Sequence record: NC_029020.1
Reading direction: 5' to 3' (one strand)
DNA length: 50,918 nucleotides
The notes under the pieces were generated by a model. That model did no database searches and was not told the DNA's origin. It saw only the letters and a program-made list of their open reading frames with translations. Shown piece after piece: positions 32,746 to 46,512 of this stretch (its first letter is position 1; each line of letters begins with the position of its first letter). Position numbers and translations under genes: made by a program.

Positions 32746-32831
32746 GTCTTTAATCTTCCGCGAGAAGGCTTAAAAATAAGCGAGAAGTGCCCGCTTCTTA
32801 ATCAGCTGTTTAAGGGCAGGGCAGTTTATTT

Positions 32832-32904
32832 CTAACTCGCCAGCTTACGCTGGATCTCGACTGCATCCTTCAGTTGGGTGTATTGTATTATCCTATCCAA
32901 CTTC
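32832..32904. repeat. 73-bp exact copy of the integrase 3' end (direct repeat, copy 1)
   Basis: CTAACTCGCC...CCTATCCAACTTC, identical to 34362-34434. Confidence 0.97.
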
Positions 32905-32959
32905 AGGTTTTAGGATCCTGCTCTTTTGCATAACTGGTTAGGCAAAAATTAATTTTCCT

Positions 32960-34320: not shown

Positions 34321-34361
34321 CTTGACACAAATAACCACCTAGCCTCTTACATAATTTAAGC

Positions 34362-34434
34362 CTAACTCGCCAGCTTACGCTGGATCTCGACTGCATCCTT
34401 CAGTTGGGTGTATTGTATTATCCTATCCAACTTC
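34362..34434. repeat. 73-bp direct repeat, copy 2 (last 73 nt of int, including the catalytic Tyr codon and the stop)
   Basis: Identical to 32832-32904. Confidence 0.97.
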
Positions 34435-35247: not shown

Positions 35248-35541
35248 TCAATTGGCTTTTCTACTTCCCATTGCTTTCTCTGCAAATTTTTCGGCTATAT
35301 TCACAATCAACATAACAAGAACCATTAGAAAGGAATCTATAATCAATTGAACCTCTAGGAAAATGCCGACTGAATTTAATCGAATTGAATTAGATATTAC
35401 TTTAGTGTAGATGTTGTTTATATATATCAAATTGACGATTTCTATTATAAAAATTAATACAGCCGAACCCCGCATGATAAGGAGGTTTCTCTTACTTCTT
35501 TTATCTTCTTGATCCGAAAGAGGATTAGGGGATTGAGACAT
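35248..35541 (-). CDS. Small two-TM membrane protein under the conserved promoter cassette
   Basis: 97 aa, two hydrophobic helices. Confidence 0.65.
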   Translation of the reverse strand: MSQSPNPLSDQEDKRSKRNLLIMRGSAVLIFIIEIVNLIYINNIYTKVISNSIRLNSVGIFLEVQLIIDSFLMVLVMLIVNIAEKFAEKAMGSRKAN

Positions 35542-35569
35542 TTTACTCGAGATATCTCTTTGATGAACT

Positions 35570-35622
35570 GATATTTAAGCTTTCTGCCTGACTGGTAAGG
35601 TAGAAAAAAGGCTATTGGCTTT
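35570..35622 (-). promoter_or_regulatory. Conserved promoter cassette A (palindromic operator plus BRE/TATA)
   Basis: Minus strand ...CCTTACCAGTCAGGCAGAAAGCTTAAATATC; 53 bp identical to 36897-36949. Confidence 0.85.
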
Positions 35623-35631
35623 TACCATCAC

Positions 35632-36423
35632 TTAGAATGTTAATGTGCTACACAATGGGCATTTGTAAGTCCTCCCGAAACGTTTCAAGTATTCCTCAGG
35701 ATCCTTTTGAATATCTCGGAAGTATATCCTTTGGTGGTTGTAAAATAACCCCGACCCTCCTTTCCTCAGCTTAGCCTCAGCCTCTACGAACTTTTGGAAG
35801 AACTCTGGGTTCTTTAACGCTAGCACTGCAAAATCTGCTGGTGTCTTGTAAGCAGAGCACCAACAATCGTAAGCTTTTCCGTAAATGTCATAAAGTGGGT
35901 TCTTCTTCAGACCGTTAACCTTTATGTACTCCTCTACATCTTTTTCTGAAAATTCGAAAATAGGAGCATACGTATAAACTTGGAATTTGGGGTGTAAATA
36001 AAATTTCACGGCACGGCTTTTCATCCAACTCTCGTCCTTTCTTACTCCCGTGATAAGGACTATTTCCTCTTTATCCTTGCCCTTCAAGAAGTCTTGTAGA
36101 GGCTCTAGTTTGAGGTAATGTTTACACCACCTCTTTGTCAGTGTAGGGAAACCTATCTTGTTCACCAACTCAAAATAGTTGTATTTGGGCCCTATAATGG
36201 TAAGCTCAATGCCCAACTCTTTAGTCACTTCTTTTACGTAATCCAATAACCCTGGTGTTGCGATACCCGTGTTAATGAATAATGCCTTTGTCTTTTCAGG
36301 ATAAATGGAGTGCGTCAAGTGTAGTGTCACCAATGAGTCTTTGCCACCGCTGAACATGACATAGATTTCTTTAAACCCGAGTAGGATCTTCTTAGCCTCT
36401 TCCTTAACTGCTAGCAGATCCAT
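35632..36423 (-). CDS. PAPS reductase / DndC-like adenine-nucleotide alpha-hydrolase family protein
   Basis: PP-loop FSGGKDS, WCKHYLKLEP, ITGVRKDES, YDCWC, C-terminal CPLC. Confidence 0.88.
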   Translation of the reverse strand: MDLLAVKEEAKKILLGFKEIYVMFSGGKDSLVTLHLTHSIYPEKTKALFINTGIATPGLLDYVKEVTKELGIELTIIGPKYNYFELVNKIGFPTLTKRWCKHYLKLEPLQDFLKGKDKEEIVLITGVRKDESWMKSRAVKFYLHPKFQVYTYAPIFEFSEKDVEEYIKVNGLKKNPLYDIYGKAYDCWCSAYKTPADFAVLALKNPEFFQKFVEAEAKLRKGGSGLFYNHQRIYFRDIQKDPEEYLKRFGRTYKCPLCSTLTF

Positions 36424-36865
36424 GACCTCCCCCTCCCCTTCCCCAATGGAGCGGATGCATCGGGTTGGTTGCGATTGATATACTATCGAGATATATCATG
36501 ATATCGTCGTACTGAGTCATATGGTACTTCAGATATATCACAATATTTTTGTAAAAGTGCCAATATTCTTCATAGATCTTCAACGCAATATATTTTCTAG
36601 ATCTCGCTATTAGCCTTTCTGCTCCATCAAAATAGAAGAATCCTAAATCATCTTCCAGTAGTTGCAAAAACTTCCTAAACTCGTCCTCAGAAAGAGGCAT
36701 ATATCTGTCGAAATCGAAATAGGTATAGATCCTTCCGTCCTCTATCTCTGGGCCCCTTATTTCGAATTTTATGCCTCTTGCCTTCAAAAATTCCTTAATG
36801 GATTCGGTTACATTTTCCCAATCATCCCTTATTTCCTTAGGGATTTCGATCTGAATTTCCGCCAT
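36404..36865 (-). CDS. Acidic small protein, candidate AcrID1-family anti-CRISPR (paralog 1)
   Basis: FDFDRYMPLSEDEFRKF and EYWHFYKNIVIYLKY..DDIMIYL resemble remembered AcrID1 FFDPEVEISKQEFEDL / EWWEFENQYLEFELDY..DEKIFV; paralogous to 38626..39015. Confidence 0.55.
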   Translation of the reverse strand: MAEIQIEIPKEIRDDWENVTESIKEFLKARGIKFEIRGPEIEDGRIYTYFDFDRYMPLSEDEFRKFLQLLEDDLGFFYFDGAERLIARSRKYIALKIYEEYWHFYKNIVIYLKYHMTQYDDIMIYLDSISIATNPMHPLHWGRGGGGHGSASS

Positions 36866-36877
36866 TTGATCCCGCGA

Positions 36878-36949
36878 GATATCTTCTGCCGAAATAGATA
36901 TTTAAGCTTTCTGCCTGACTGGTAAGGTAGAAAAAAGGCTATTGGCTTT
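36878..36949 (-). promoter_or_regulatory. Conserved promoter cassette B
   Basis: GATATCTTCTGCCGAAATAGATATTTAAGCTTTCTGCCTGACTGGTAAGGTAGAAAAAAG; nearly identical to C, and its 53-bp right part is identical to A. Confidence 0.85.
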
Positions 36950-37349
36950 GGGTTTCTCCTTCATCATCGACAAACAGCTGGTTGTTAAGACCCATCCCAT
37001 CGCCTTCCTTCGGCCTGAACACGATCTGCATATTTTCGGGAACTAAGTACGGGTCGAGATCTACGACGGGCTTGGCCAGCTCGCTTGGGATTGATATGTA
37101 ATACTGCGTAAAGACCTTTCCGTTCTTTTTTTCTCGTTTAATCAACCATCTTAATCGGATTCTTAGACCTTTTTTGGCATATCTTCGGTTGGGTTTGAAT
37201 TCTATTATATTATTTTTAATATTGAAATACGGCACATAATTGATTAGGAACACCGCTGACCTGCTGGTGACGTTTATGTATCTTAACATATACTCTTTCC
37301 CATTTTTCCTGTTTATCTTTACCCTCCACCTCAGCTTGACTTCGACCAT
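36939..37349 (-). CDS. Basic protein with two tandem AbrB/SpoVT-like swapped-hairpin repeats; candidate regulator
   Basis: VKLRWRVKINRKNGKEYMLRYINV / IRLRWLIKREKKNGKVFTQYYISIP. Confidence 0.55.
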   Translation of the reverse strand: MVEVKLRWRVKINRKNGKEYMLRYINVTSRSAVFLINYVPYFNIKNNIIEFKPNRRYAKKGLRIRLRWLIKREKKNGKVFTQYYISIPSELAKPVVDLDPYLVPENMQIVFRPKEGDGMGLNNQLFVDDEGETQSQ

Positions 37350-37380
37350 GCTTTCCTATTATTGTATTGATATGAAACCC

Positions 37381-37410
37381 TATAAATATACCTTACCTGT
37401 CAGGCAGAAA
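37381..37410 (-). promoter_or_regulatory. Promoter cassette E with the operator inverted relative to A/B/C
   Basis: Minus strand TTTCTGCCTGACAGGTAAGG directly followed by TATATTTATA, 31 nt upstream of ATG 37349. Confidence 0.75.
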
Positions 37411-37522
37411 GAAGGGGAAAGAAAAAATATTGAACTGACGTAACAGTTTGATTGCAGAGGGGTTAACACCCAACAAACAAAGTGCCACGTCAAAAAGCGT
37501 GGCGAGGTAAAAATCGTAAACT

Positions 37523-38041
37523 TTACCGCACCGGATTTAGGCAGATAGGATATTCATATTCCTTTTCGTACTCCTCGTAAGCCTCGTCTTCGTTTCCAGG
37601 GTTTTTCATCTCCTCTATTAACTTATTGATGAAATCCCTGCTGAAAGTGTTTATGACAAGCAGAGCCCTTCGTTCATTACAAATTACGTTCCCGTTCTCT
37701 ATCTTTTCAATCCTATCGCAGAAGTCGAATATCATGTATTCACTTGATAACGATGCCAATTTCTCTCTAGGAATTTTCAGATCTATAGGAAAATATGAAC
37801 CGTCGTTGTCTATCACCAGGCTACAAAACACGACACATTTGTTACCTTTCCTGTCCTTGTATAAGTGCAGAGACGCAAGGATTAGAGGAAATGCCGAATG
37901 AGGGATATCCCCGAAATATACCACTACTGGCTTGTTTTCCGAATTTAACGCGAAAATGGCGACCCTCTTTCCGAGATTATTTACGACAATCTTTAACTCG
38001 TTGGGGTCGACACCTCCTAATTTTATCCCTACTTCCGCCAT
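37523..38041 (-). CDS. Hypothetical protein, 172 aa, under cassette C; candidate anti-defence gene
   Basis: ORF track; acidic C-terminus; begins MAE like the cassette B gene. Confidence 0.7.
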   Translation of the reverse strand: MAEVGIKLGGVDPNELKIVVNNLGKRVAIFALNSENKPVVVYFGDIPHSAFPLILASLHLYKDRKGNKCVVFCSLVIDNDGSYFPIDLKIPREKLASLSSEYMIFDFCDRIEKIENGNVICNERRALLVINTFSRDFINKLIEEMKNPGNEDEAYEEYEKEYEYPICLNPVR

Positions 38042-38055
38042 TTATGTCCCCGCAA

Positions 38056-38114
38056 GATATCTTCTGCCGAAATAGATATTTAAACTTTCTGCCTGACTAG
38101 TAAGGTAGAAAAAG
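38056..38114 (-). promoter_or_regulatory. Conserved promoter cassette C
   Basis: GATATCTTCTGCCGAAATAGATATTTAAACTTTCTGCCTGACTAGTAAGGTAGAAAAAG. Confidence 0.85.
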
Positions 38115-38186
38115 CCTTAGACCCTAACGGCCCTTAGGCGGGCATCTCTTATTTATAAACCGAATCGGGACAAGTAGATAATTGTA

Positions 38187-38492
38187 ATGGGAATCTTAGA
38201 AGAAGTCCAAAACGCCTTGGCGTACTATCAAAAAACAGCAGTTAGCGAAAAAGATTCCCTGTACCTCCACAACATCTACTCGCAGTTGTACTACATTTTA
38301 ACCGTAGAAAACAGACCGCTTGGTGCCGATGAGTTCGACAGCCTGTTGAAAGCCTTAGGGGTAAACGACACAACGCTACTGGTGCAGGAATACCAGTCCT
38401 TAACCGATGAACAGAAGAAGCAGATCCTCATGCAGATCCTGCAAATGATAGAAAGCGTGATGAGGAATATACATACAATGGTAAACTACTAA
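38187..38492 (+). CDS. Hypothetical helical protein, 101 aa
   Basis: ORF track; TATA TTTATAAA at ~38152. Confidence 0.65.
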   Translation: MGILEEVQNALAYYQKTAVSEKDSLYLHNIYSQLYYILTVENRPLGADEFDSLLKALGVNDTTLLVQEYQSLTDEQKKQILMQILQMIESVMRNIHTMVNY

Positions 38493-38625
38493 TTCCCTCC
38501 TTAAGAATTAAGAATTTTTTCGTTTTCCCTTCTAGTCTTGCGTCTGCTCCCCGCCGGGCTTCCCCGATATACAGCTGTTTAAAGCTTAAATTATAAAGGC
38601 CGGCAAGATGTTACCTCGATAGCAA

Positions 38626-39015
38626 ATGAACGGAAACGAGATAGTAGAAGAAATTTTAGAATTCCTAAATAAAAAAGGTGCTAAGTTCGATATAGATCAG
38701 TTCGAAACCGAAAACAAAACGCTCAAACTTGAAGTAGAATTCCCGAAACCTATAATTCTAACTGAAACGGAATACGATATGCTGTATGATCTTCTGAAGA
38801 GCTTAGGGTTCTATCCTGTAAACGGGGCCGAAAACAAGATAAACGAATATGTAGGGTATAAAAATTATACAGGAATAGAAGAATTCGAAAACGATGCAGG
38901 AGACAAAATATGGTTAGAATACAACAAGGTTTCGGTGGGAGGAGAGACTACTTATTTTGTTAAAAATGTAGAAGTCGAGCTCAATACGGAAGAATTCATG
39001 AACCTGCTTTTCTAA
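38626..39015 (+). CDS. Acidic small protein, candidate AcrID1-family anti-CRISPR (paralog 2)
   Basis: IVEEILEFLNKKGAKFDI..LTETEY..LL..LGF...GAENKI aligns with 36404..36865; contains EEFEN; promoter AAAGCTTAAATT at 38581. Confidence 0.55.
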   Translation: MNGNEIVEEILEFLNKKGAKFDIDQFETENKTLKLEVEFPKPIILTETEYDMLYDLLKSLGFYPVNGAENKINEYVGYKNYTGIEEFENDAGDKIWLEYNKVSVGGETTYFVKNVEVELNTEEFMNLLF

Positions 39016-39272
39016 ACCCTGAAAGCATCATTTTATTTTTTATCTTTAATAAGAAAGCCAGTTTTTCAGCTATAGAGTTCTTGAAAAGTCGCGGTTCAGT
39101 CTGCTAAACATACGGTTGAGGCGAAATCATGGCAAGCCTAACGAGGTTACGGTAAGTTACGCGTCTTAGAACGTCTGGGAATCAACCCCTTAGTCGAAAT
39201 AGAAAAAAGAATAATATATTTAAAAAGAAAAAATTGGCTTCAAAAAGAGAATACGAGACGGCACGTGCTTTT

Positions 39273-40196
39273 CTACGTGATTATTTTGATGCTGAAAATG
39301 CGTGAAGATGGATTAAATAATAAAATTCGTAACCTTTCATGCTTCAGCTTTTTGACGAATCTCTGATTGTTGACCTTGTAATCAACAACGAAGCGTTTGA
39401 GCCCGGTTATGTAATCCGGCAACGTTTTATATAACTTGACCGCCTCCTCCCTTTTACCGTCCTTCAGAAGTAACAGTACAACGGCTACCTTGACCAATAT
39501 CGGGTTGTACAGCTTTAGCAATTTATCAAGGAGATTAACATACCCGTATTTGCTCAGGAGCTCGTACGTATACTGCCTTAGCTTTCGCATTTTCGTCTTT
39601 AGTAAACCCTGCATTTCTTCCTTCGTTAAGCCGAGCTTCTCTTTCAGGACGTAACTTAATTCGAACATGGCATCGGATAGTTTCTGTTTTATTGTGTCCT
39701 CATCATCAGTTGAGAAATTACCGATTAGCTGAATGATGCGGTCTGGCTCGACGTCGCAATACTGAATAGCAAAAGCACCCAATATGTAGAGCTTGTTTGG
39801 AATTTTCCTGCGGAGCATCTTTTGTGCTATTCGCCTGAAGAGGGCTTTCTGTGCAGAGTCCGAAATTAACAAAGAAACCCTATATGCAAAGGAATAATAT
39901 TTCAGTCTCGTGTCGTATTCTACAGGGATCGTGCTGATTCCACCGTACGGTAAAAATGTATTTGCGGGACGATAATGGGTATAAATTTTATATACTATGT
40001 TGAACCTGCTTGACGAATCGTCTATTCCTTCTAAATTGCTGGCGAAGTACTTCTCGTAGTCGTAGCCGATTACTTCTCCGTTGTCCGCACAGACGAGATA
40101 TATGCCGTGAGTCACGATTTGTTTACACTGAACACTTTCAGACTGGTCAAAAAACATTTGGCCGAAAGTTTGAGTTTGAACGACTGCTTCTGTCAT
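39273..40196 (-). CDS. Hypothetical protein, 307 aa
   Basis: Long ORF. Confidence 0.7.
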   Translation of the reverse strand: MTEAVVQTQTFGQMFFDQSESVQCKQIVTHGIYLVCADNGEVIGYDYEKYFASNLEGIDDSSSRFNIVYKIYTHYRPANTFLPYGGISTIPVEYDTRLKYYSFAYRVSLLISDSAQKALFRRIAQKMLRRKIPNKLYILGAFAIQYCDVEPDRIIQLIGNFSTDDEDTIKQKLSDAMFELSYVLKEKLGLTKEEMQGLLKTKMRKLRQYTYELLSKYGYVNLLDKLLKLYNPILVKVAVVLLLLKDGKREEAVKLYKTLPDYITGLKRFVVDYKVNNQRFVKKLKHERLRILLFNPSSRIFSIKIIT

Positions 40197-40330
40197 ACCG
40201 AGTCAATTATGGCCGGGGACTGTTTAAAAAGTAATACTGTAGTGAAATGCATAATACCGTAGAATGGGTCTAATCAGAAAAAATTGAATTTGTTGTTAAA
40301 TTATAAATTACAAACTCGTCAGCGTAATTA

Positions 40331-40552
40331 TCACTTTTCTGCTTTCAACAATATCTCGTAAGGGCTTGGAACGTTGTAAATTAAAGATTTAAGATTTTCT
40401 AGTATTTTCGATATTCCATCATATACGCTGTCATACTTAGGATTNTCTTCGCTGAGATAAAAGTAATCTTTTTCTAAATCCTTAAAATACCTTAAAATCT
40501 CTTCCAAAGACCTTTTGTACTGTTCATAATGTTTGTCTGCATTGTCCAGCAA
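40331..40552 (-). CDS. Small helical hypothetical protein (probably the 3' part of a gene starting ~40668, disrupted by Ns or a frameshift)
   Basis: ORF track; upstream promoter at ~40700 and ATG at ~40668. Confidence 0.45.
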   Translation of the reverse strand: MLDNADKHYEQYKRSLEEILRYFKDLEKDYFYLSEXNPKYDSVYDGISKILENLKSLIYNVPSPYEILLKAEK

Positions 40553-40745
40553 TGTAAGTAACTTAAGTTAGCTCTTTCTCCTTTAATAATGTAAGAACGC
40601 TCTTACCTTCAGTGGTCGAATTTTGNTTANNGTTTTCTGTACTTTGTTCGTCCCAGAACTCCTGAGCCATACTTATCCCATGCTGATTCTCTCAAACGGC
40701 TGTATAAAAGCTTTATGTCGGAAAGCATATAATGGATCGGTGTTT

Positions 40746-41003
40746 TCATTCCTCTGGGATTATTTCCTTGATGTAAGCCTTATGGATGTATGTGGTTCTA
40801 TTTGACATGTCTACAAATTCTATGAAGTATTTTTGATTGTCGTTTATCTTACCCTCTATCGTGGAACCGTCGTGAAAAACTATTCTGCATGCCTTCCCTA
40901 CCCACTTCTTCCCGAAATCGCCGAACTCCTTAACGCCGTTTTTCTGCTCCTGCTTCATNTTCATNTTTTGCTTCAAGCTTTTCACCCCGATGCCCGAATT
41001 CAA
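40746..41003 (-). CDS. Sm/Lsm/Hfq-like fold protein
   Basis: WVGKACRIVFHDGSTIEGKINDNQKYFIEF...TTYIHKAYIKEIIP matches the Sm1 (V.I.L.NG..L.G.I) and Hfq Sm2 (MVYKHAISTVVP) patterns. Confidence 0.65.
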   Translation of the reverse strand: MNSGIGVKSLKQXMXMKQEQKNGVKEFGDFGKKWVGKACRIVFHDGSTIEGKINDNQKYFIEFVDMSNRTTYIHKAYIKEIIPEE

Positions 41004-41170
41004 ATTTAGCNGATTAGGTTTTTAAAGNANGNNGNCTGGTGCTTTCCTATNTGCCTCAAACGGCTGTTTGAGCCTGCCTCAGGCTATAAGCCCGTAATCC
41101 GTATGATTCTGACGGGCGAAAATATTAAAAACCGGGATGTGCTAAAATATACGAAAAGGAGGCCAGAAAA

Positions 41171-41737
41171 ATGCAGGCTAAACCAAGTTACATAGACCCG
41201 ACCTCAATAAATAAGCTTTTCGGTCAAGCTCCTTTCAGGTCTGAAAAGGTCGCCAAGATATTTGAGNTNCTNAGCCTGGGCAGACCGATGTTAGCGAGGG
41301 ATCTGGCAGAGGCAATTAACGTCCCTTCGAAGCAGATCCTGCCGAGGCTGAAGAGGTACATCCAGAGGGGATGGGTCGCCGTCCAGAAGGTAAACAACAT
41401 CAACATCTATTCCCTCACCGAGACGGCCAGGAANATATTGAAGCTACAGGGCAGTTTCGANAAGGTAAGGGAGAAGGCCGAGAAGGTCTTAGGGAGGAAG
41501 CTGGAAAGCGACGAGCTGGAGATCCTGAAGTTCTTCTATAAGGAGCAGAGGTACATAGAGAACTCTCCGAATGAGACGATTGCAGAGCAGGTGTGGCACT
41601 CCGTCGGGATGAAGATCCCCTTGTCAAGGGTACAGGAAATACTAACCGAGTTCACGCTGAGAGGGATCCTGTTCGCCTTCAGGCTGAAGAACGGGCAGAT
41701 CTTGAAGGTGAGGCTGAACAGNAACCTCCTTCTCTAG
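41171..41737 (+). CDS. Tandem winged-helix DNA-binding protein
   Basis: ARDLAEAINVPSKQILPRLKRYIQRGWV...YSLT plus a second wHTH-like half (LSRVQEILTEFTLRGIL). Confidence 0.75.
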   Translation: MQAKPSYIDPTSINKLFGQAPFRSEKVAKIFEXXSLGRPMLARDLAEAINVPSKQILPRLKRYIQRGWVAVQKVNNINIYSLTETARXILKLQGSFXKVREKAEKVLGRKLESDELEILKFFYKEQRYIENSPNETIAEQVWHSVGMKIPLSRVQEILTEFTLRGILFAFRLKNGQILKVRLNXNLLL

Positions 41738-42158
41738 CTAAAGAAGGGCTAATGGACGCCTAATTCTATACACCATTTTTCTCAATTTAGTAATAAAAAT
41801 TCTAAGCAACGTACCTTCCCGCCGTAAATTGTAAAAGCCTGCTTTACGGCGAAAGTAATTATTTGTATAAAGCCCGCGNTCTANCGGCGTAAATNCAAAA
41901 TNCNCTAAAAGGAGATATATTATAATTACTACTACCCCGCTTTTNGCGACCGCTANGCGTGCNGGCCGGCGTTCTTTTGGTGCCGTTGGTTTTACGCGTT
42001 TTTACGGAGACTAGCTTACACTGTTGTTAGACTAATTGAGTTTTTNCTTTTACAGCNGGAGAAATTATTTGGTAGGGTAATGCGTAGTGTGAGCGGGCTT
42101 TACTACCTGCTTATACTAATTGCCTGTATGCTCGCTATATTCCGGTCAGACCTCACAA

Positions 42159-42240
42159 CTCTCCAGTAGTAGTTATTGCAAGCGGTTTGCCGGATTGACT
42201 GGAGATCGTCAAACCGTCTGGCCCTCAAACAGCCGTTTAA
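42159..42240 (+). repeat. ori-like element 1 upstream of Rep
   Basis: 21-bp CTCTCCAGTAGTAGTTATTGC, hairpin CGGTTTG..CAAACCG, then TCAAACAGCCGT; homologous to 43378-43457. Confidence 0.85.
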
Positions 42241-42289
42241 CTGATCTAAAACACATTAACGTTATTAAACCCTAAAACCGACATAGATT

Positions 42290-43159
42290 ATGGTAGGGGA
42301 TCATATTATGACACGGACACGTTTCACTGACGAAAGAATGGCCAAAGAATCTCTCCTTAAGAGTAAAATGGCACTTGAAAACGCCTTCAAACGTTATAAA
42401 GATGCCATCATGGTTACCCTGACGGTGTCACATATATTCCCACTAGTAATTCCTTTAGAAGTTAATGGCCAGAGTATTAGCTATATTCCCCTTCAGGACT
42501 CAATAGTTTCAAATCTGAAGAATTACCTATTGGNCTGGNNNAGNNAAATGTGGAAAGACCGCAAAATTGAGACATTCACAGCTTACGAATATCACGAGGA
42601 TTACAATTTATACCTTCACACCATAATTTTTGGTATTCCTTGTCTCATCGATTGGTCTAAAAAATTCGGTAAGAAAAAGGAAGACGCATTAACCTATTAC
42701 GCCCGGAAGTACAATATCCCCTTACCTCCTGACGCCGAAAAGACCCTAATTTCCAAATCCGTTCTCACCGTGTTATCAGACAAATGGCTCATGAAAATTT
42801 TGGCAAAATTTGACTCAGTACTCAACACTAATCTATTAATGGGTTACATAAACTACAAGATGAAATATAATTTACAAGGGCCAACGATTGAGATATATAA
42901 GATTAAGGACGGTCAGTGGGATGGCACGCCTCCTAGCGACGCCGTTATTCAATATTCAGGTGATGTTAAATATAAAAAAGTTTTATCGCCAGAAGAATAT
43001 GTTACCAAAAATATACTCAGAATCTATAGCATGTTAAGAGGAGGAGGTGGAAGAATAGACGAAGAAGACCAAGCAAAAACCATTGGCTATTGGTTATTCG
43101 GAAAACGATTTAATTCCTATTCCCTCTCTTTGTTGTCACAGGAAAAAGGCACCACTTAA
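42290..43159 (+). CDS. HUH-superfamily rolling-circle replication initiator (Rep), possibly degenerate
   Basis: Motif 1 MVTLTV, motif 2 YEYHEDYNLYLHTIIFG (first His appears as Tyr), motif 3 EEYVTK, C-terminal YWLFGKRFNSYS. Confidence 0.7.
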   Translation: MVGDHIMTRTRFTDERMAKESLLKSKMALENAFKRYKDAIMVTLTVSHIFPLVIPLEVNGQSISYIPLQDSIVSNLKNYLLXWXXXMWKDRKIETFTAYEYHEDYNLYLHTIIFGIPCLIDWSKKFGKKKEDALTYYARKYNIPLPPDAEKTLISKSVLTVLSDKWLMKILAKFDSVLNTNLLMGYINYKMKYNLQGPTIEIYKIKDGQWDGTPPSDAVIQYSGDVKYKKVLSPEEYVTKNILRIYSMLRGGGGRIDEEDQAKTIGYWLFGKRFNSYSLSLLSQEKGTT

Positions 43160-43377
43160 ACTTTCGTAATATTTTTGAACTAACATTTGACTAATTAAAT
43201 TCAGGAAACTTATAAATTTTCCACGATATATTTATGGAAGAACAACATTTGTCATTCGGTGTTTACTTTTACTTGTAGGGAAATTTTTGCGGAAGGATAT
43301 GCGGAGGGGAAACAAAAGGGGATAAGGCTTTGCTATTTGTTTGTATACCTGTTACCTATAGCACGATATTCTCCACT

Positions 43378-43457
43378 CTCTCCAGTAGTAGTTATTGCGG
43401 GTAGTTGGTCGGCCTGACAGGGGATTGGGTTAACCACACGTCAAACAGCCGTATAAC
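43378..43457 (+). repeat. ori-like element 2 downstream of Rep, same orientation as element 1
   Basis: Identical 21-bp CTCTCCAGTAGTAGTTATTGC, similar core (CGG..TGAC.GG.GAT), then TCAAACAGCCGT. Confidence 0.85.
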
Positions 43458-43613
43458 GGTTGGATATTGACTTCCTTCCAGCTCTGAAGGGCGGTGTAGT
43501 TAACTCGAGCTGAACCGCGTTATTGTGTTGGACGCATGCTCCCTCAAACAGCCGTTTGAGGACAGCACAATGGTTGGCGGACAGTCCCAACCTCAAAAAA
43601 CGAAATCCTCTTT

Positions 43614-44165
43614 TCACATTTCAGACCACATCCCAGTCGCCATTAGAATGTAGATTACGCTCATTGCCTCCCCGAACGACGCCAAGACGCCGACAATTAA
43701 TGCCAAGTCATTCGCGAACAGTTGTAGCGGAGGAGCGAGGAACGGTAATGATACTCTCTGCGTCATAGGCAATAGGATCACGTAGACATACAGTGCAATG
43801 CTTTCAAAGCTGTTGAAAATGAACTGAAGCACTAAGTAAATGAAGATTATCTGGAGTGTGCCCATTGTCTGCTGTGACAGGTTCAGGACATAATTCCTTA
43901 CAAACAACGCACCGATGGTAGTGATCCCTCCTAACATTGCTCCAGCTATTACGCCGTTACTACCGAACAGCTTTCCTAAAAGAGACTCCAAATATAACGG
44001 TAGGTTTAACGACATCAAATACGATATATAATGTGCAACTTGGGTATCCGTCGAATACGCATTTAAGTTAACGATGGTTCCCAGTATATAGACGAAAATA
44101 GACGAATACATTATACCCTCATTAATCCTGTAAAAGACAGTGGCGAGCGACCCAATGAGACCCAT
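43614..44165 (-). CDS. Polytopic membrane protein, 183 aa
   Basis: Four to five hydrophobic helices. Confidence 0.7.
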   Translation of the reverse strand: MGLIGSLATVFYRINEGIMYSSIFVYILGTIVNLNAYSTDTQVAHYISYLMSLNLPLYLESLLGKLFGSNGVIAGAMLGGITTIGALFVRNYVLNLSQQTMGTLQIIFIYLVLQFIFNSFESIALYVYVILLPMTQRVSLPFLAPPLQLFANDLALIVGVLASFGEAMSVIYILMATGMWSEM

Positions 44166-44187
44166 AAAAAAGACTTTGAACCTTGGA

Positions 44188-44382
44188 TTAAAAAACCTGG
44201 CTTTCGGACGACTTGAGACGGAGTGGGTTCCCAGGGGTTTTTGTCAGACAGTTTCCATTAAGATAAGACTCGATGGCTTCCCTGACTACATCGCTCCTCG
44301 ACATCCAATTGTTCATGGCGAACAGATCGAGTTCTTTCAATAAATGTTCGGGGAGCTTGACCGTTACGACCTTCATTTTCAT
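44188..44382 (-). CDS. CopG-like ribbon-helix-helix regulator
   Basis: KVVTVKLPEHLLKELD...SRSDVVREAIESYL. Confidence 0.88.
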   Translation of the reverse strand: MKMKVVTVKLPEHLLKELDLFAMNNWMSRSDVVREAIESYLNGNCLTKTPGNPLRLKSSESQVF

Positions 44383-44696
44383 TTGTGATCACCTGTTGGC
44401 TCTTTTTCGACTACCGAATAGATGCGGAATAAATTGGCTCCAATTTTTTGATTTAAAAACGATAGCGTCTCCAAGACCTTTTTTGCTTGCCAATTGTTTT
44501 TCAGAGCTATATCTGATCTAAGAGATCGCACCATGGATGACAATCTGCTGACGTCCTCCTCCAGCTCCCTGAAGATCTCCTGGATCTCCAACTCATTCAT
44601 TCCTCCTCGCCCCTCCCCTCCGATCGTTTCAGAAAAAAGGGCGGTGACTTTTTCATTTCCCTTGGGGAAGTTACCCACAGTAACCATTTTCCTCAA
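44379..44696 (-). CDS. SSV1 D63-like helical-hairpin protein (core probably starts at ATG 44600)
   Basis: EIFRELEEDVSRLSSMVRSLRSD...QKIGANLFRI versus remembered D63 [23 protein letters not shown]...QKIEAELYQL. Confidence 0.65.
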   Translation of the reverse strand: MRKMVTVGNFPKGNEKVTALFSETIGGEGRGGMNELEIQEIFRELEEDVSRLSSMVRSLRSDIALKNNWQAKKVLETLSFLNQKIGANLFRIYSVVEKEPTGDHK

Positions 44697-44714
44697 TGAA
44701 TTTTACGGTCGGTA

Positions 44715-44762
44715 TAGATATTTAAAGCTTCTGCCTGCCTAGTAAGGCAGAAAACTTAAATA
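44715..44762. promoter_or_regulatory. Symmetric divergent promoter cassette D
   Basis: TATTTAA-AGC-TTCTGCCT-GCCTAGTA-AGGCAGAA-AAC-TTAAATA, a two-fold symmetric operator with a TATA box on each side. Confidence 0.85.
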
Positions 44763-44775
44763 CCAGCTTGCTCAA

Positions 44776-45360
44776 ATGATTACTTGGTCAAAAATGTCCC
44801 AGGCCCAACACCCCAAAGACGAGGAGATTTATGAAGTGCTGAAGAAAGAAGGGTTGGAGGATCTTTACGATCTCATAATGAAATACAAAGATGTGGCGGA
44901 ACCACTTTTGAAGGAAATATTATCAAACAAGGACGAAGTAAAGAACATGATCGATACTTTGAAGAAAGAAGGGTTGGAAGATTTTTTAAAGGATGTAATC
45001 ATGGCTTATAACCCCAGAGCCATATTCGAACGGATTATTAAAACAAAACACGCATTAAAGAGGATTATAGACAAGTATGAGCAGGGCAACAATAAGGTAG
45101 CTTTTGATAAAGCCAATAATAAGAATACGATCGTCGCTATCAAATTCAGAACTCCAGAAGAAATGGAGGAATTCAATCGATTAGCCATTGAAATGGATGA
45201 CCTTAGAAATGGAAAAGAGCCCGAAGCCTTGGAAATGACATACGAAGAATTCGCTCAAAGGTTCAAACCGAGAATGATATGGTATAAAAGAATAGGGAGC
45301 GAGAAAGAGGGTACTTATTCTNCTTTGATGGGAGGTTACAGATTTGACGAAGAATTATAA
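44776..45360 (+). CDS. Hypothetical acidic helical protein with an internal 40-aa-spaced repeat
   Basis: LKKEGLED occurs twice; identical 19-bp DNA at 44840 and 44960. Confidence 0.7.
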   Translation: MITWSKMSQAQHPKDEEIYEVLKKEGLEDLYDLIMKYKDVAEPLLKEILSNKDEVKNMIDTLKKEGLEDFLKDVIMAYNPRAIFERIIKTKHALKRIIDKYEQGNNKVAFDKANNKNTIVAIKFRTPEEMEEFNRLAIEMDDLRNGKEPEALEMTYEEFAQRFKPRMIWYKRIGSEKEGTYSXLMGGYRFDEEL

Positions 45361-45758
45361 GGTCGTAATTTTACNTATACCATTTATTNATGACNNGGAT
45401 GTATTAATCGCTTCAAAGCTGTACGAAAAACGTCTACTCCCCTTTCGTTCAGTGATNATGAAGATCTCCTGCCAAGAGGATTGATCATATTCATTCCCAG
45501 NTAGAAAAACTATTTTTCTTTATCTTAGTCCATTTCGCCCNGAGACGNGCNCTTACTTCTTCTGCTGAGACTGCGTGGGCNTGCGTGGGACTCCCTGCTT
45601 CTGCCTCCTTCTTCCGTGGCCTATTTCGTGGACTCCCAAGAATCAGTCTTAACTAAAAGGAAAGGGTAAATTAAAAACGCCTCCGTCCCTTCATTGGTAG
45701 GGGATGAGGTCTACTATTTTTATTGATGTAATTCTAAGTCCAATGTGGGAGATCGTAA

Positions 45759-45899
45759 ATGAGAGACAAGGAGAGGTGGGAGGAAGAAATAAAATACATG
45801 AAAGTACATAAGTACACAATGATAGCCCTTGTAATTCTGCTAGATGCAGTAATAAGAATAAAAACGATTCTTAGAAAAATACTCGTAAAACTAAGCTGA
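45759..45899 (+). CDS. Possible 46-aa small protein with one hydrophobic helix (below the ORF-track cutoff)
   Basis: MRDKERWEEEIKYMKVHKYTMIALVILLDAVIRIKTILRKILVKLS*, read by eye. Confidence 0.35.
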   Translation: MRDKERWEEEIKYMKVHKYTMIALVILLDAVIRIKTILRKILVKLS

Positions 45900-46233
45900 T
45901 TTCCTCCAACGGACGCGGTTTCTAGTGATGAATAATGAAAGTGAATAAACACACAATATCAGCCCTCGAAGTTTTGTTTTCTGTAATAACGGGAATAAAC
46001 TCCAAGCAGATGATAGTAACCGATAACAATCAAGAAAGTAGAGATGGTATGAGCCCCGAGGAAAGGAGTGNNATCATAATAGGGCTTATTATAGCCCTTA
46101 TTGCTTGTGCTATAGTTTGTTACCTNCNTATTACNAANCAAATCGTCTGTGCACCAAACACAATTTGAATCGGTTCTACGCTTAAATGATTTCCGACCGA
46201 AATCTATATTAGTNNNAGTTAGAGGCTAATCTT

Positions 46234-46512
46234 ATGAAAGTAGTGACGAAAAAAGAATCACCAACAAAGTTCCTGTTCAACGCGATGACCAGNGACGAAT
46301 ATGAAAAAGCTAAGAGGTTCCATGAGTTTCTCAAAAACATCTCTAAAGGNNCGCACGGTTACCTAACGATCGAATGGGANGATCTCATNGATATGNCATC
46401 NGGCTTCTTGAAGACCACGCCATATGATGCATATCGGATTCTGATGAAGATGAAGGANTACGGCTGGATCAAGGAAATCGACAGGCATTTTATTATCGTT
46501 AACACCGATTGA
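46234..46512 (+). CDS. Small protein with a wHTH-like C-terminus
   Basis: TPYDAYRILMKMK.YGWIKEI. Confidence 0.55.
   Translation: MKVVTKKESPTKFLFNAMTXDEYEKAKRFHEFLKNISKXXHGYLTIEWXDLXDMXXGFLKTTPYDAYRILMKMKXYGWIKEIDRHFIIVNTD

What the first reader, a model, noticed from the sequence alone, without database searches (positions are those of the whole stretch)
35570..44762. Family of palindromic operator-promoter cassettes marking an early/anti-defence regulon
The operator TTTCTGCCT-N8-AGG(C/T)AGAAA abuts a strong BRE/TATA (GAAAGCTTAAATA on the minus strand). It occurs at 35581 (A), 36908 (B), 38086 (C), inverted at 37391 (E), and as a symmetric divergent promoter at 44729 (D), with a degenerate copy at 32924. 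Even the N8 spacer is conserved. B and C share sequence through the leader into the first codons (ATGGCGGAA). Shared early promoters are known to flag anti-defence genes in Sulfolobales viruses, and the layout recalls the mobile promoter cassettes of T4-like phages. The downstream genes (35541, 36865, 37349, 38041, 44696, 44776) are therefore prime candidates.
Basis: partly seen in the sequence, partly recalled or inferred. Interest (0 to 1): 0.8.

Follow-up and report, generated by a model that had tools for sequence, protein, structure and literature searches.

The report
Shared palindromic promoter cassettes in SMV2
Six promoters of the archaeal virus SMV2 share a 26-bp palindrome placed directly against a strong TATA box; this regulon was already published in 2024, but comparison with relatives suggests its regulator and its cargo differ from what was proposed.

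Summary
The window is the complete genome of Sulfolobus monocaudavirus SMV2. A near-perfect 26-bp palindrome abuts a consensus BRE/TATA at 35581, 36908, 38086 and 44728 (bidirectional). A variant at 37385 overlaps the TATA box, and a divergent copy lies at 32923. Chance expectation is 0.13 matches.

The finding is not new. Bhoobalan-Chitty et al. 2024 (PMC11065993) describe this SMV2 motif, list gp37, gp39, gp41, gp51 and gp52 as predicted anti-defence genes, and propose gp37 as the repressor.

What I add:
- The cassette family also occurs in SMV1, SMV3, SMV4, YNP1, about 30 metagenomic contigs and, in variant form, YNP2.
- gp37 is an orphan with two membrane-like hydrophobic segments and is absent from every other cassette-bearing genome.
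- gp50, co-transcribed from cassette D, is a homologue of the cell-cycle regulator aCcr1. That family binds a different box, which I find in 14 of 17 RHH promoters against 1 of 40 others.
- In relatives the cassette also drives a homologue of an ATV virion protein. The regulon is therefore not purely anti-defence.
- The small basic gp40 family has the same distribution as the cassette. Its gene sits next to operators in SMV2 and in an unrelated element. It is the best regulator candidate, but this is inferred, not shown.

The parts
35548..35622 (-). Cassette A. T6 tract (35607-35612), 26-bp palindrome (35581-35606), BRE/TATA (35572-35578), AGATATCT element (35550-35557). Promoter of gp37.
   Evidence: (family D3)
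35248..35541 (-). gp37, 97 aa. Orphan protein with two hydrophobic segments, probably a small membrane protein. Published candidate repressor.
   Evidence: no homologues; one long helix, no alignment; Kyte-Doolittle 19-residue maxima 2.1 and 2.4, against -0.33 for the GCN4 zipper
36875..36949 (-). Cassette B. Palindrome 36908-36933, TATA 36899-36905, AGATATCT 36877-36884. Promoter of the gp39-gp38 operon.
35632..36865 (-). gp39 (36404-36865; paralogue of gp43, phrog_24726) and the overlapping gp38 (35632-36423; PAPS-reductase domain, DndC/SspD/BrxP-like).
   Evidence: The genes overlap by 20 nt.
37376..37411 (-). Cassette E. Palindrome in flipped orientation (37385-37410), with its proximal arm replaced by the TATA box TATATTTATA (37376-37387). 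Promoter of gp40. Not in the published list.
   Evidence: (I5, I6, I9)
36939..37349 (-). gp40, 136 aa. Tandem duplication of a basic beta-beta-alpha-beta-beta unit (family phrog_18276). Best candidate for the palindrome-binding regulator.
38053..38127 (-). Cassette C. Palindrome 38086-38111, TATA 38077-38084, AGATATCT 38055-38062. Promoter of gp41. It lies in the divergent intergenic region shared with gp42.
37523..38041 (-). gp41, 172 aa, unknown function. 45% homologue in SMV3, 47% in contigs L185 and L201.
44714..44765 (.). Cassette D. One palindrome (44728-44753) between two outward-facing TATA boxes (44718-44727 for the minus strand, 44755-44762 for the plus strand). Bidirectional promoter.
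   Evidence: (family D6)
44188..44687 (-). gp51 (SSV1 D-63-like, PF20940) and gp50 (ribbon-helix-helix, aCcr1 family). Their ends overlap by 4 nt, so they form one operon.
44794..45360 (+). gp52, 188 aa, unknown function, internal 120-nt repeat. No homologues in related genomes.
   Evidence: (family D12)
32923..32948 (.). Divergent copy CTTTTGCATAACTGGTTAGGCAAAAA, of the type found in virus YNP1. No gene downstream. It lies inside a 1.5-kb insert flanked by 80-nt repeats.
   Evidence: (family D9)

Best explanation
Each cassette is a compact transcription unit boundary made of four elements. In order they are: an oligo-T tract that can terminate the upstream gene; a 26-bp palindromic operator; a consensus BRE/TATA that the operator's proximal arm overlaps; and an AT-rich element near the start site.

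A dimeric, virus-encoded DNA-binding protein recognises the palindrome. Because the site covers the BRE, binding most likely blocks TFB/TBP and shuts these strong promoters off together. The regulon in SMV2 has five promoter regions and eight genes: gp37, gp39-gp38, gp40, gp41, gp51-gp50 and gp52.

The binder is most likely the small basic gp40 family, as a homodimer of the 52-72-aa form or as the fused tandem form found in SMV2. It is probably not gp37. gp50 is a viral aCcr1 homologue that acts through its own, different box.

Shown here: the sequence architecture, its conservation across viruses, and the co-distribution with gp40. Inferred: protein binding, repression, timing, and the identity of the binder.
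For: Architecture and non-randomness:
- The palindrome, TATA spacing and start-codon distance are consistent in every copy.
- The palindrome keeps a fixed 0-3 nt distance to the TATA box in 52 non-redundant sites from SMV1-4 and metagenomic contigs, whatever lies upstream.
- The inner half-sites CTAAC/GTTAG are equally conserved on both sides (1.3-1.9 bits). This argues for a symmetric protein site rather than only an extended BRE.
- In copies C and D the palindrome lies upstream of its own start site with no co-oriented gene before it, so there it cannot be an RNA element.

Against gp37 as binder:
- It has no homologue in 50,697 virus records, in 5.8 billion proteins, or in any fetched cassette-bearing locus.
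- It has two membrane-like hydrophobic segments.

Against gp50 as binder:
- The aCcr1 family binds AGTATTA.
- TAATAC lies between TATA and ATG in 14 of 17 RHH promoters, against 1 of 40 other palindromic promoters (Fisher p = 1e-9).
- In YNP1 the RHH gene has no cassette.

For gp40:
- Among annotated viruses, both the cassette (YNP2 variant) and the gp40 family occur only in SMV1, SMV1a, SMV2, SMV3, SMV4, YNP1 and YNP2.
- All 6 IMG/VR contigs selected by gp40-like carry 1-4 cassettes.
- 34 control loci of at least 6 kb, lacking a gp40-like gene, carry none.
- Contig L225 has a different backbone, with a pRN1-type primase and no integrase in 20 kb. There a perfect palindrome lies 77 nt upstream of the gp40-like gene, and a half-copy abuts that gene's own TATA box.
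- In SMV2 the gp40 promoter carries operator E.
- The family has a pI of about 10 and an invariant basic hairpin.
- The AlphaFold model has pLDDT 81 and pTM 0.72 and shows two repeated units.
- Genomes with the tandem form (SMV2, YNP2, L226) have asymmetric or variant operators. Genomes with the single-domain form have symmetric ones.
Against: - No binding, transcript or reporter data exist for any SMV2 promoter.
- The gp40 fold has no relative in the PDB (Foldseek E > 0.5) and no Pfam match, so DNA binding is not established.
- Most gp40-plus-cassette contigs are syntenic SMV relatives, so they are not independent. The truly independent lineages are few: SMV, YNP1, YNP2, L225 and L227.
- One gp40-bearing contig (L228) shows no cassette.
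- SMV1 has a gp40-like gene but only one cassette.
- In SMV1, SMV3 and SMV4 the gp40-like gene itself has no cassette.
- An operator just upstream of the BRE can also activate transcription in archaea.
- A host factor cannot be excluded. Only the exact SMV2-type palindrome was scanned against genomes, and it found nothing archaeal.
Confidence: 0.45

Rival explanations
1. Published model: gp37 is a leucine-zipper repressor that binds the inverted repeats and shuts off early anti-defence genes (an Aca-like loop, with gp37 itself under cassette A).
For: - PMC11065993 proposes this model.
- gp37 is under cassette A.
- A homologue is reported in MAG JAKMAB010000038.1, which also carries inverted repeats.
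- AlphaFold gives one long helix.
- A short basic stretch, KRSKR, precedes the helix.
Against: - gp37 is absent from SMV1, SMV3, SMV4, YNP1 and every other cassette-bearing contig.
- Its hydropathy is that of a two-pass membrane protein, with maxima of 2.1 and 2.4 against -0.33 for a true zipper.
- The basic N-terminal residues are not conserved in the MAG homologue (sequence seen).
- The single-helix model was made without an alignment and says little.
Confidence: 0.08
2. The ribbon-helix-helix protein gp50 (aCcr1 family) binds the palindrome and autoregulates. It would be an acr-aca-like operon, with the regulator as the last gene.
For: - An orthologous RHH gene follows a cassette in SMV1 (where it is the only copy), SMV2, SMV3, SMV4 and the motif-selected contig L210.
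- The RHH fold is confirmed.
- VTVK-type RHHs go with SMV2- or YNP2-type operators, and VTFK-type RHHs with CTAAC/GTTAG operators.
Against: - aCcr1 and its viral homologues bind the aCcr1-box AGTATTA, not this palindrome.
- That box sits specifically in the RHH promoters, which explains autoregulation without involving the palindrome.
- The DNA-reading strand RVVTFK is identical to that of the host aCcr1, whose ChIP motif is only the aCcr1-box.
- Only about 30% of RHH loci carry the cassette.
- The YNP1 RHH gene has no cassette.
Confidence: 0.12
3. A host transcription factor binds the palindrome. It would act either as an activator that makes these promoters fire immediately after entry, or as a host repressor that the virus exploits.
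For: - Immediate-early promoters can rely only on host proteins.
- The position just upstream of the BRE is typical of archaeal activators (general knowledge).
- The host Csa3b site (TTTTC-N8-GAAAA) lies immediately upstream of a very similar strong promoter (PMC11065993).
Against: - The spacing differs from the Csa3b site: TTTC-N18-GAAA here against N8 there.
- The exact palindrome was not found in any archaeal genome among 185,579 species.
- Operator variants follow virus lineages (SMV, SMV2, YNP1 and YNP2 types), which suggests a co-evolving viral partner.
Confidence: 0.2
4. The palindromes are recombination sites for the tyrosine integrase (9-bp inverted arms with an 8-bp spacer, as in lox or FRT). 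They would make an integron-like array of exchangeable gene cassettes next to the integrase gene.
For: - The arm-spacer-arm geometry fits such a site.
- Copies A, B, E and C lie directly beside the integrase gene and flank genes unique to SMV2.
- The same layout next to the integrase occurs in L003, L215-L221 and YNP1.
- The flanks are mosaic.
- An 80-nt repeat of the integrase 3' end lies beside copy 32923.
Against: - The invariant 0-3 nt coupling to a TATA box is unexplained by recombination.
- The A/B/C mosaic breakpoint lies after the TATA box, not in the spacer.
- L225 has the palindrome but no integrase within 20 kb.
- Copies D and several SMV3 copies lie about 10 kb or more from the integrase gene.
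Confidence: 0.1

Closest known systems
Early / anti-defence regulatory sequences of archaeal viruses (Bhoobalan-Chitty et al. 2024, Nat Commun 15:3699)
   Same: It is the same object. The paper shows the SMV2 consensus with inverted repeats overlapping the BRE. It lists gp37 (as regulator), gp39, gp41, gp51 and gp52, with gp50 and gp38 as low-probability members.
   Different: - gp40 and copy E are not listed.
- The paper assigns the regulator role to gp37, which my comparisons do not support.
- It treats each virus motif separately, whereas the SMV1-4, YNP1 and YNP2 motifs form one family.
- Its main text does not connect gp50 to aCcr1.
Aca-controlled acr operons of phages, and Aca8 of rudiviruses
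   Same: A strong early promoter carries an inverted repeat over its core elements. A small regulator encoded within the regulon provides negative feedback.
   Different: Aca proteins are HTH or RHH proteins with demonstrated binding. Here the best candidate (gp40 family) has an unclassified beta-rich fold, and nothing has been tested. No downstream gene is a known Acr.
Csa3b operators in the type I-A cas promoter of Sulfolobus (PMC5389559)
   Same: Palindromic repeats lie immediately upstream of a nearly identical strong BRE/TATA. Binding represses, and repression is relieved on infection.
   Different: The Csa3b site is TTTTC-N8-GAAAA (18 bp, two tandem copies). The viral site is a single 26-bp palindrome with the inner half-sites CTAAC/GTTAG.
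aCcr1 and the aCcr1-box (PMC9976878, PMC9976892)
   Same: gp50 and its SMV1, SMV3 and SMV4 orthologues belong to this RHH family. SMV3 gp63 was tested and blocks cell division. The aCcr1-box is present in the viral RHH promoters.
   Different: The aCcr1-box (AGTATTA, between TATA and the start codon) is a second, separate element. It is absent from the SMV2 cassettes, which carry AGATATCT at that position in A, B and C.
PeSL mobile promoter cassettes of T4-type phages
   Same: Repeated early-promoter-plus-palindrome units flank variable accessory genes. Their flanks are mosaic, which suggests recombination between copies.
   Different: In T4 the stem-loop is a terminator and recombination substrate. 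Here the palindrome is fixed to the TATA box and is not transcribed from its own promoter. This is an analogy only, recalled from memory and not tested.
RHH repressors of archaeal viruses and plasmids (SvtR of SIRV1, ORF56 of pRN1)
   Same: They are small virus-encoded repressors acting at promoter-proximal repeats. The gp50 family profile hits both in the PDB (E = 0.0014 and 0.008).
   Different: They are distant homologues with different operators.

Membership tests
Archaeal-virus ADG/early regulatory sequence (PMC11065993) | Strong consensus BRE/TATA promoter | tested here: met
   TTAAATA or TTTAAATA preceded by AGAAAG or AGAAAA, 30-35 nt before the start codon, in all six promoters. Other SMV2 promoters lack this consensus.
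Archaeal-virus ADG/early regulatory sequence (PMC11065993) | The same flanking regulatory sequence is shared by several genes of one genome | tested here: met
Archaeal-virus ADG/early regulatory sequence (PMC11065993) | Transcription immediately after infection | not testable with these tools
   There are no SMV2 transcript data. The SMV1a time course exists (PRJNA1170361), but the RHH ORF is not annotated there and no per-gene table is held.
Archaeal-virus ADG/early regulatory sequence (PMC11065993) | Downstream genes inhibit host defence | tested here: inconclusive
   No PADLOC, Pfam or PDB match to a known inhibitor was found. gp38 has a DndC/SspD-like domain. gp50 is a cell-cycle regulator homologue. 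Relatives drive a virion-protein homologue from the same cassette.
Autoregulated small-repressor operator (Aca-like loop), with gp40 as repressor | The regulator gene co-occurs with the operator across genomes | tested here: met
   The number of independent lineages is limited.
Autoregulated small-repressor operator (Aca-like loop), with gp40 as repressor | An operator sits at the regulator's own promoter | tested here: inconclusive
   Met in SMV2 (copy E) and in L225. Not met in SMV1, SMV3 and SMV4, where the gene follows the integrase gene without a cassette.
Autoregulated small-repressor operator (Aca-like loop), with gp40 as repressor | The protein has a recognised DNA-binding fold and binds the site | tested here: not met
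   No Pfam or PDB relative was found. Only indirect signs exist: pI about 10, a conserved basic hairpin, and a dimer or tandem architecture. Binding cannot be tested here.
aCcr1 family (for gp50) | Small RHH protein homologous to SiRe_0197 / SMV3 gp63 | tested here: met
   PF01402 at E = 2e-6. 46% identity to SMV3 gp63 over 39 aa and 51% to the SMV1 ORF. One alignment covers the family. YNP2 and SMV3 members are named in the papers.
aCcr1 family (for gp50) | An aCcr1-box in the target or own promoter | tested here: not met
   Present in 14 of 17 RHH promoters of relatives, but not in SMV2 cassette D or in the SMV2-like contigs L128-L131. The divergent SMV2 protein (VVTVKL strand) may have a changed specificity.
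Leucine-zipper repressor (for gp37) | Soluble amphipathic coiled coil with a conserved basic DNA-reading region | tested here: not met
   Hydropathy is in the membrane-protein range. The basic residues are not conserved in the only reported homologue.
Tyrosine-recombinase core site | Inverted arms around a 6-8-bp spacer, with junctions between cassettes falling in the spacer | tested here: inconclusive
   The geometry fits. The one mosaic breakpoint I could place lies after the TATA box.

The most novel reading that the evidence does not exclude
The gp40 family comprises about 100 protein clusters, found only on virus- or plasmid-sized contigs from hot springs, with no Pfam or PDB relative. 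It may be a new class of small beta-rich transcription regulators of Sulfolobales mobile elements. It would bind the 26-bp palindrome as a homodimer or as a fused pseudo-dimer, switch a strong-promoter accessory regulon, and replace the published gp37 assignment. Because the gene often sits beside the integrase gene, it might also double as a recombination directionality factor, in the manner of Cox or Apl.
Probability: 0.4. Interest if true: 0.55.

Novelty: already known. Interest (0 to 1): 0.35.

Why it matters
The cassettes themselves, and their use as a flag for anti-defence genes, are already published, so the finding adds little on its own.

Two points matter for anyone who follows up the published gene list:
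- The proposed regulator, gp37, is probably a membrane protein. If it is not the regulator, guilt-by-association searches seeded with it will mislead. The gp40 family is the better bait.
- The regulon mixes functions. It includes a cell-cycle hijacker (an aCcr1 homologue), a DNA-modification-type enzyme and, in relatives, a virion protein. Sharing the promoter is therefore not sufficient evidence for an anti-defence role.

The unannotated aCcr1 homologue in SMV1, sitting behind that virus's only cassette, also bears on the open question of how SMV1 enlarges its host cells.

Tried and rejected
- RHH gp50 as the palindrome binder. This was my working model. I dropped it to 12% after finding the aCcr1 papers and the separate aCcr1-box in the RHH promoters, and the cassette-less RHH gene in YNP1.
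- gp40 as an AbrB/SpoVT-like protein, guessed from the motif 'YYISIPSELA'. It is not supported: no Pfam hit, no PDB sequence hit, and Foldseek against the PDB gave E > 0.5. The viral structure library returned only members of its own family.
- The gp44 family as a diverged TFB. This was suggested by synteny with the true TFB genes of YNP2 and YNP1 and by a shared 'TGEVI' motif. An HMM search against the PDB found nothing, and hhalign gave a probability of 1.6%.
- Csa3b-site mimicry. The spacing does not fit.
- Exact-palindrome scan of 185,579 genomes. The SMV1-type consensus therefore could not be scanned against host genomes.
- gp37 and gp40 single-sequence searches of IMG/VR. Both found only SMV2 itself.
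- Timing from the SMV1a transcriptome paper. No per-gene table is held, and the RHH ORF is not annotated there.
- Plasmid collection. No cassette was found.
- Co-occurrence statistics on the RHH-centred loci. The 12-kb windows are too short to hold both genes.

Full report
**Identity of the window.** The 50,918-bp window is identical over the tested 12.5 kb to Sulfolobus monocaudavirus SMV2 (KP238129.1 / NC_029020.1). This is a circular genome of the same length, from Yellowstone, in the family Bicaudaviridae.

- The pattern TTTCTGCCT-N8-AGGYAGAAA occurs without mismatch at 35581, 36908 and 38086, with one mismatch at 44728, and with three mismatches on the minus strand at 37385. Shuffles give 0.13 matches.
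- An unbiased repeat search recovers the same units as a 75-nt family (35548, 36875, 38053) and a 41-nt family that includes 44714.
- Read in the direction of transcription, each palindrome is followed after 0-2 nt by TTAAATA or TTTAAATA, and after a further 30-35 nt by the start codon of gp37, gp39, gp40, gp41, gp51 or gp52.
- The 'spacer' is itself palindromic (ACTAGT), so the element is one 26-bp palindrome with two asymmetric positions.
- Copies A, B and C carry a T5-T6 tract just upstream and an AGATATCT palindrome near the expected start site. Three of the four genomic occurrences of that octamer are in these cassettes.
- Copy D has a TATA box on each side and serves the two divergent genes.
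- In copy E the TATA box replaces the proximal arm.
- Other SMV2 promoters do not have this consensus core.

**Prior art.** Bhoobalan-Chitty et al. 2024 (PMC11065993) used exactly this logic and analysed SMV2.
- They list gp39, gp41, gp51 and gp52 as predicted anti-defence genes and gp37 as the associated regulator. gp50 and gp38 are low-probability members.
- They propose that gp37 is a leucine zipper that binds the repeats.
- gp40 and copy E are not listed.

**The motif is a family, not an SMV2 peculiarity.** I built a position matrix from the copies, required a TATA box, and scanned related sequences.
- It finds 1 copy in SMV1, at least 7 in SMV3, 4 in SMV4 and 6 in IMG/VR contig L003.
- It finds 64 sites (52 non-redundant) in 30 loci overall.
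- The consensus is TTTCnnCCTAACnnGTTAGGCAGAAA, followed after 0-2 nt by TTTAAATA.
- The inner half-sites CTAAC/GTTAG are equally conserved on both sides. The proximal GCAGAAA, which doubles as the BRE, is nearly invariant.
- A blastn search with the cassette against 50,697 virus records hits only SMV1, SMV1a, SMV2, SMV3, SMV4 and YNP1. Nothing is found in PLSDB plasmids.
- YNP1 has five copies of the variant TTTTTGCCTAACnnGTTAGGCAAAAA. This is the same type as the 'degenerate' SMV2 copy at 32923.
- YNP2 and its relatives carry a further variant in front of an operon that is homologous, leader included, to SMV2 gp51-gp50.

**What the regulon encodes.**
- gp50 is a ribbon-helix-helix protein (PF01402; its family profile hits CopG, NikR, SvtR and pRN1 ORF56 in the PDB).
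- Orthologues follow a cassette in SMV1, SMV3 (gp63), SMV4 (gp58) and the motif-selected contig L210. In SMV1 this is an unannotated minus-strand ORF at 41757-41960, behind that virus's only cassette.
- This family is aCcr1, the archaeal cell-cycle regulator. [quoted passage not shown]
- The box core TAATAC lies at that position in 14 of 17 non-redundant RHH promoters, but in only 1 of 40 other palindromic promoters (Fisher p = 1.2e-9). The RHH genes therefore carry two separate control elements, and the palindrome is not the aCcr1 site.
- gp38, co-transcribed with gp39, has a PAPS-reductase domain closest to SspD, BrxP and DndC.
- gp39 is a paralogue of gp43.
- gp51 is D-63-like.
- In SMV3, SMV4, L003 and six further contigs, a cassette drives a homologue (52% identity) of an ATV virion protein.
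- None of gp37, gp39, gp40, gp41, gp51 or gp52 matches a defence or anti-defence model. 'Anti-defence regulon' is thus an untested label for a functionally mixed set.

**Who binds the palindrome?**
- gp37 is a poor candidate.
  - It has no homologue in the virus records, in 5.8 billion proteins, or in any cassette-bearing locus.
  - It has two hydrophobic segments with Kyte-Doolittle maxima of 2.1 and 2.4, against -0.33 for the GCN4 zipper.
  - AlphaFold's single long helix was made without an alignment and says little.
- gp50 is unlikely, for the reasons given above. In addition, the YNP1 RHH gene has no cassette, and only about 30% of RHH loci have one.
- Among proteins shared by SMV2 and YNP1, only the integrase, gp40, gp50, gp56 and a few structural or membrane proteins remain.
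- The gp40 family (phrog_18276) fits best.
  - Among annotated viruses it occurs in exactly the cassette-bearing ones: SMV1, SMV1a, SMV2, SMV3, SMV4 and YNP2, plus YNP1 gp70.
  - All six IMG/VR contigs retrieved with a gp40-like query carry 1-4 cassettes.
  - Thirty-four control loci of at least 6 kb, lacking a gp40-like gene, carry none.
  - Of four divergent gp40-bearing contigs, L225 is the most telling. It has a pRN1-type primase backbone and no integrase in 20 kb. It carries a perfect palindrome 77 nt upstream of the gp40-like gene and a half-copy against that gene's own TATA box. L227 has two YNP1-type copies, L226 has the YNP2-type copy, and L228 has none detected.
  - In SMV2 the gp40 promoter carries copy E.
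  - The family is strongly basic (pI 9.3-10.4) with an invariant LRW..K...K hairpin.
  - It comes as a 52-72-aa single unit or as a 118-128-aa tandem.
  - The tandem form of SMV2 is modelled with pLDDT 81 and pTM 0.72 as two repeated beta-beta-alpha-beta-beta units.
  - Genomes with the tandem form have asymmetric or variant operators, and those with the single form have symmetric ones. This would be expected of a fused pseudo-dimer, but it rests on few lineages.
- Caveats.
  - The fold has no relative in the PDB or Pfam.
  - Most supporting contigs are syntenic relatives.
  - The integrase has nearly the same distribution.
  - A host factor is not excluded.
  - I put about 45% on gp40.

**Mechanism.** The operator's proximal arm contains the BRE, so a bound dimer should exclude TFB. 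This is the same logic the published paper uses, and it resembles Csa3b at the host type I-A cas promoter, although the Csa3b site has a different geometry. Repression is therefore the more likely direction, perhaps 2:1 over activation. This is inference only.

**Cassette mobility.**
- A and B share the 19 nt upstream of the palindrome. B and C share the leader. The breakpoint lies just after the TATA box.
- gp37, gp38 and gp39 have no counterpart in SMV1, SMV3 or SMV4. gp41 has one only in SMV3.
- The gp40 gene has moved relative to the integrase gene.
- This pattern fits homologous recombination between cassettes. It is a weak analogy to the T4 promoter cassettes and does not by itself indicate site-specific exchange.

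**Verdict.** The interpretation repeats a published prediction that remains untested. My analysis refines it in three ways: the regulator is probably not gp37, the gp40 family is the best candidate, and the regulon is not purely anti-defence because it includes a viral aCcr1 homologue.

Noticed in passing
window 32825-32904 and 34355-34434: An 80-nt direct repeat (96% identical). The second copy is the 3' end of the integrase gene. The repeats bracket a 1.5-kb segment (gp33-gp35, absent from SMV1, SMV3 and SMV4) that also holds the YNP1-type palindrome at 32923. The YNP1 integrase is 75% identical to that of SMV2. This looks like an insertion, or a recombination scar with a YNP1-like element, at the end of the integrase gene.
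   Followed up: partly
L104 (SMV1, NC_023585.1) 41757-41960, minus strand: An unannotated 67-aa aCcr1-family RHH ORF lies opposite the annotated gp40, behind SMV1's only cassette and an aCcr1-box. PMC9976878 states that the SMV1 cell-division regulator is not yet identified. The 2024 supplement lists this ORF only as a putative regulator.
   Followed up: partly
L103 1170-2192 (YNP2 gp50); L213 35401-36405 (YNP1 gp65); L113/L140, L147, L226, L228: True TFB/TFIIB homologues (E = 2e-24 against TFIIB structures) are encoded just downstream of the RHH gene in YNP1- and YNP2-like elements. They are absent from SMV1-4.
   Followed up: partly
L003 around 2670, 3005 and 3350; L208, L209; L210 around 350, 5950 and 8500: A second palindrome, AAACAGCTGTTT, recurs 40-60 nt on the non-TATA side of many cassettes in related contigs. 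In SMV2, AACAGCTGTT occurs only inside genes (5622, 48352).
   Followed up: partly
window 35632-36423: The PAPS-reductase domain of gp38 is closest to SspD, BrxP and DndC, the enzymes of DNA phosphorothioation and BREX. A viral DNA-modification or anti-restriction role is possible. It is 85% identical at the DNA level to a gene of Acidianus tailed spindle virus.
   Followed up: no
window 44621-44687 compared with L103 417-480: The first ~22 residues and the leader of SMV2 gp51 match YNP2 gp53, whereas the rest is the D-63-like domain of YNP2 gp52. gp51 therefore looks like a deletion fusion of two genes.
   Followed up: no
window 10860-14190: Large internal direct repeats (periods of 1203 and 1629 nt, 74-85% identity) lie inside the 1563-aa gene gp11. 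Part of this repeated domain is also found in YNP1.
   Followed up: no
window, mainly 40300-46500: The deposited genome holds 295 N bases. Several ORFs in this stretch (gp45-gp48, gp52-gp55) therefore contain X residues, and their searches are weakened.
   Followed up: no
window 41171-41737 (gp47); L137, L148, L157, L169, L171, L184, L185, L197, L199: Homologues of gp47 (weak TrmB-type winged helix, E = 0.0013) lie divergently next to the cassette-plus-RHH unit in nine metagenomic contigs. They are absent from SMV1, SMV3 and SMV4.
   Followed up: partly
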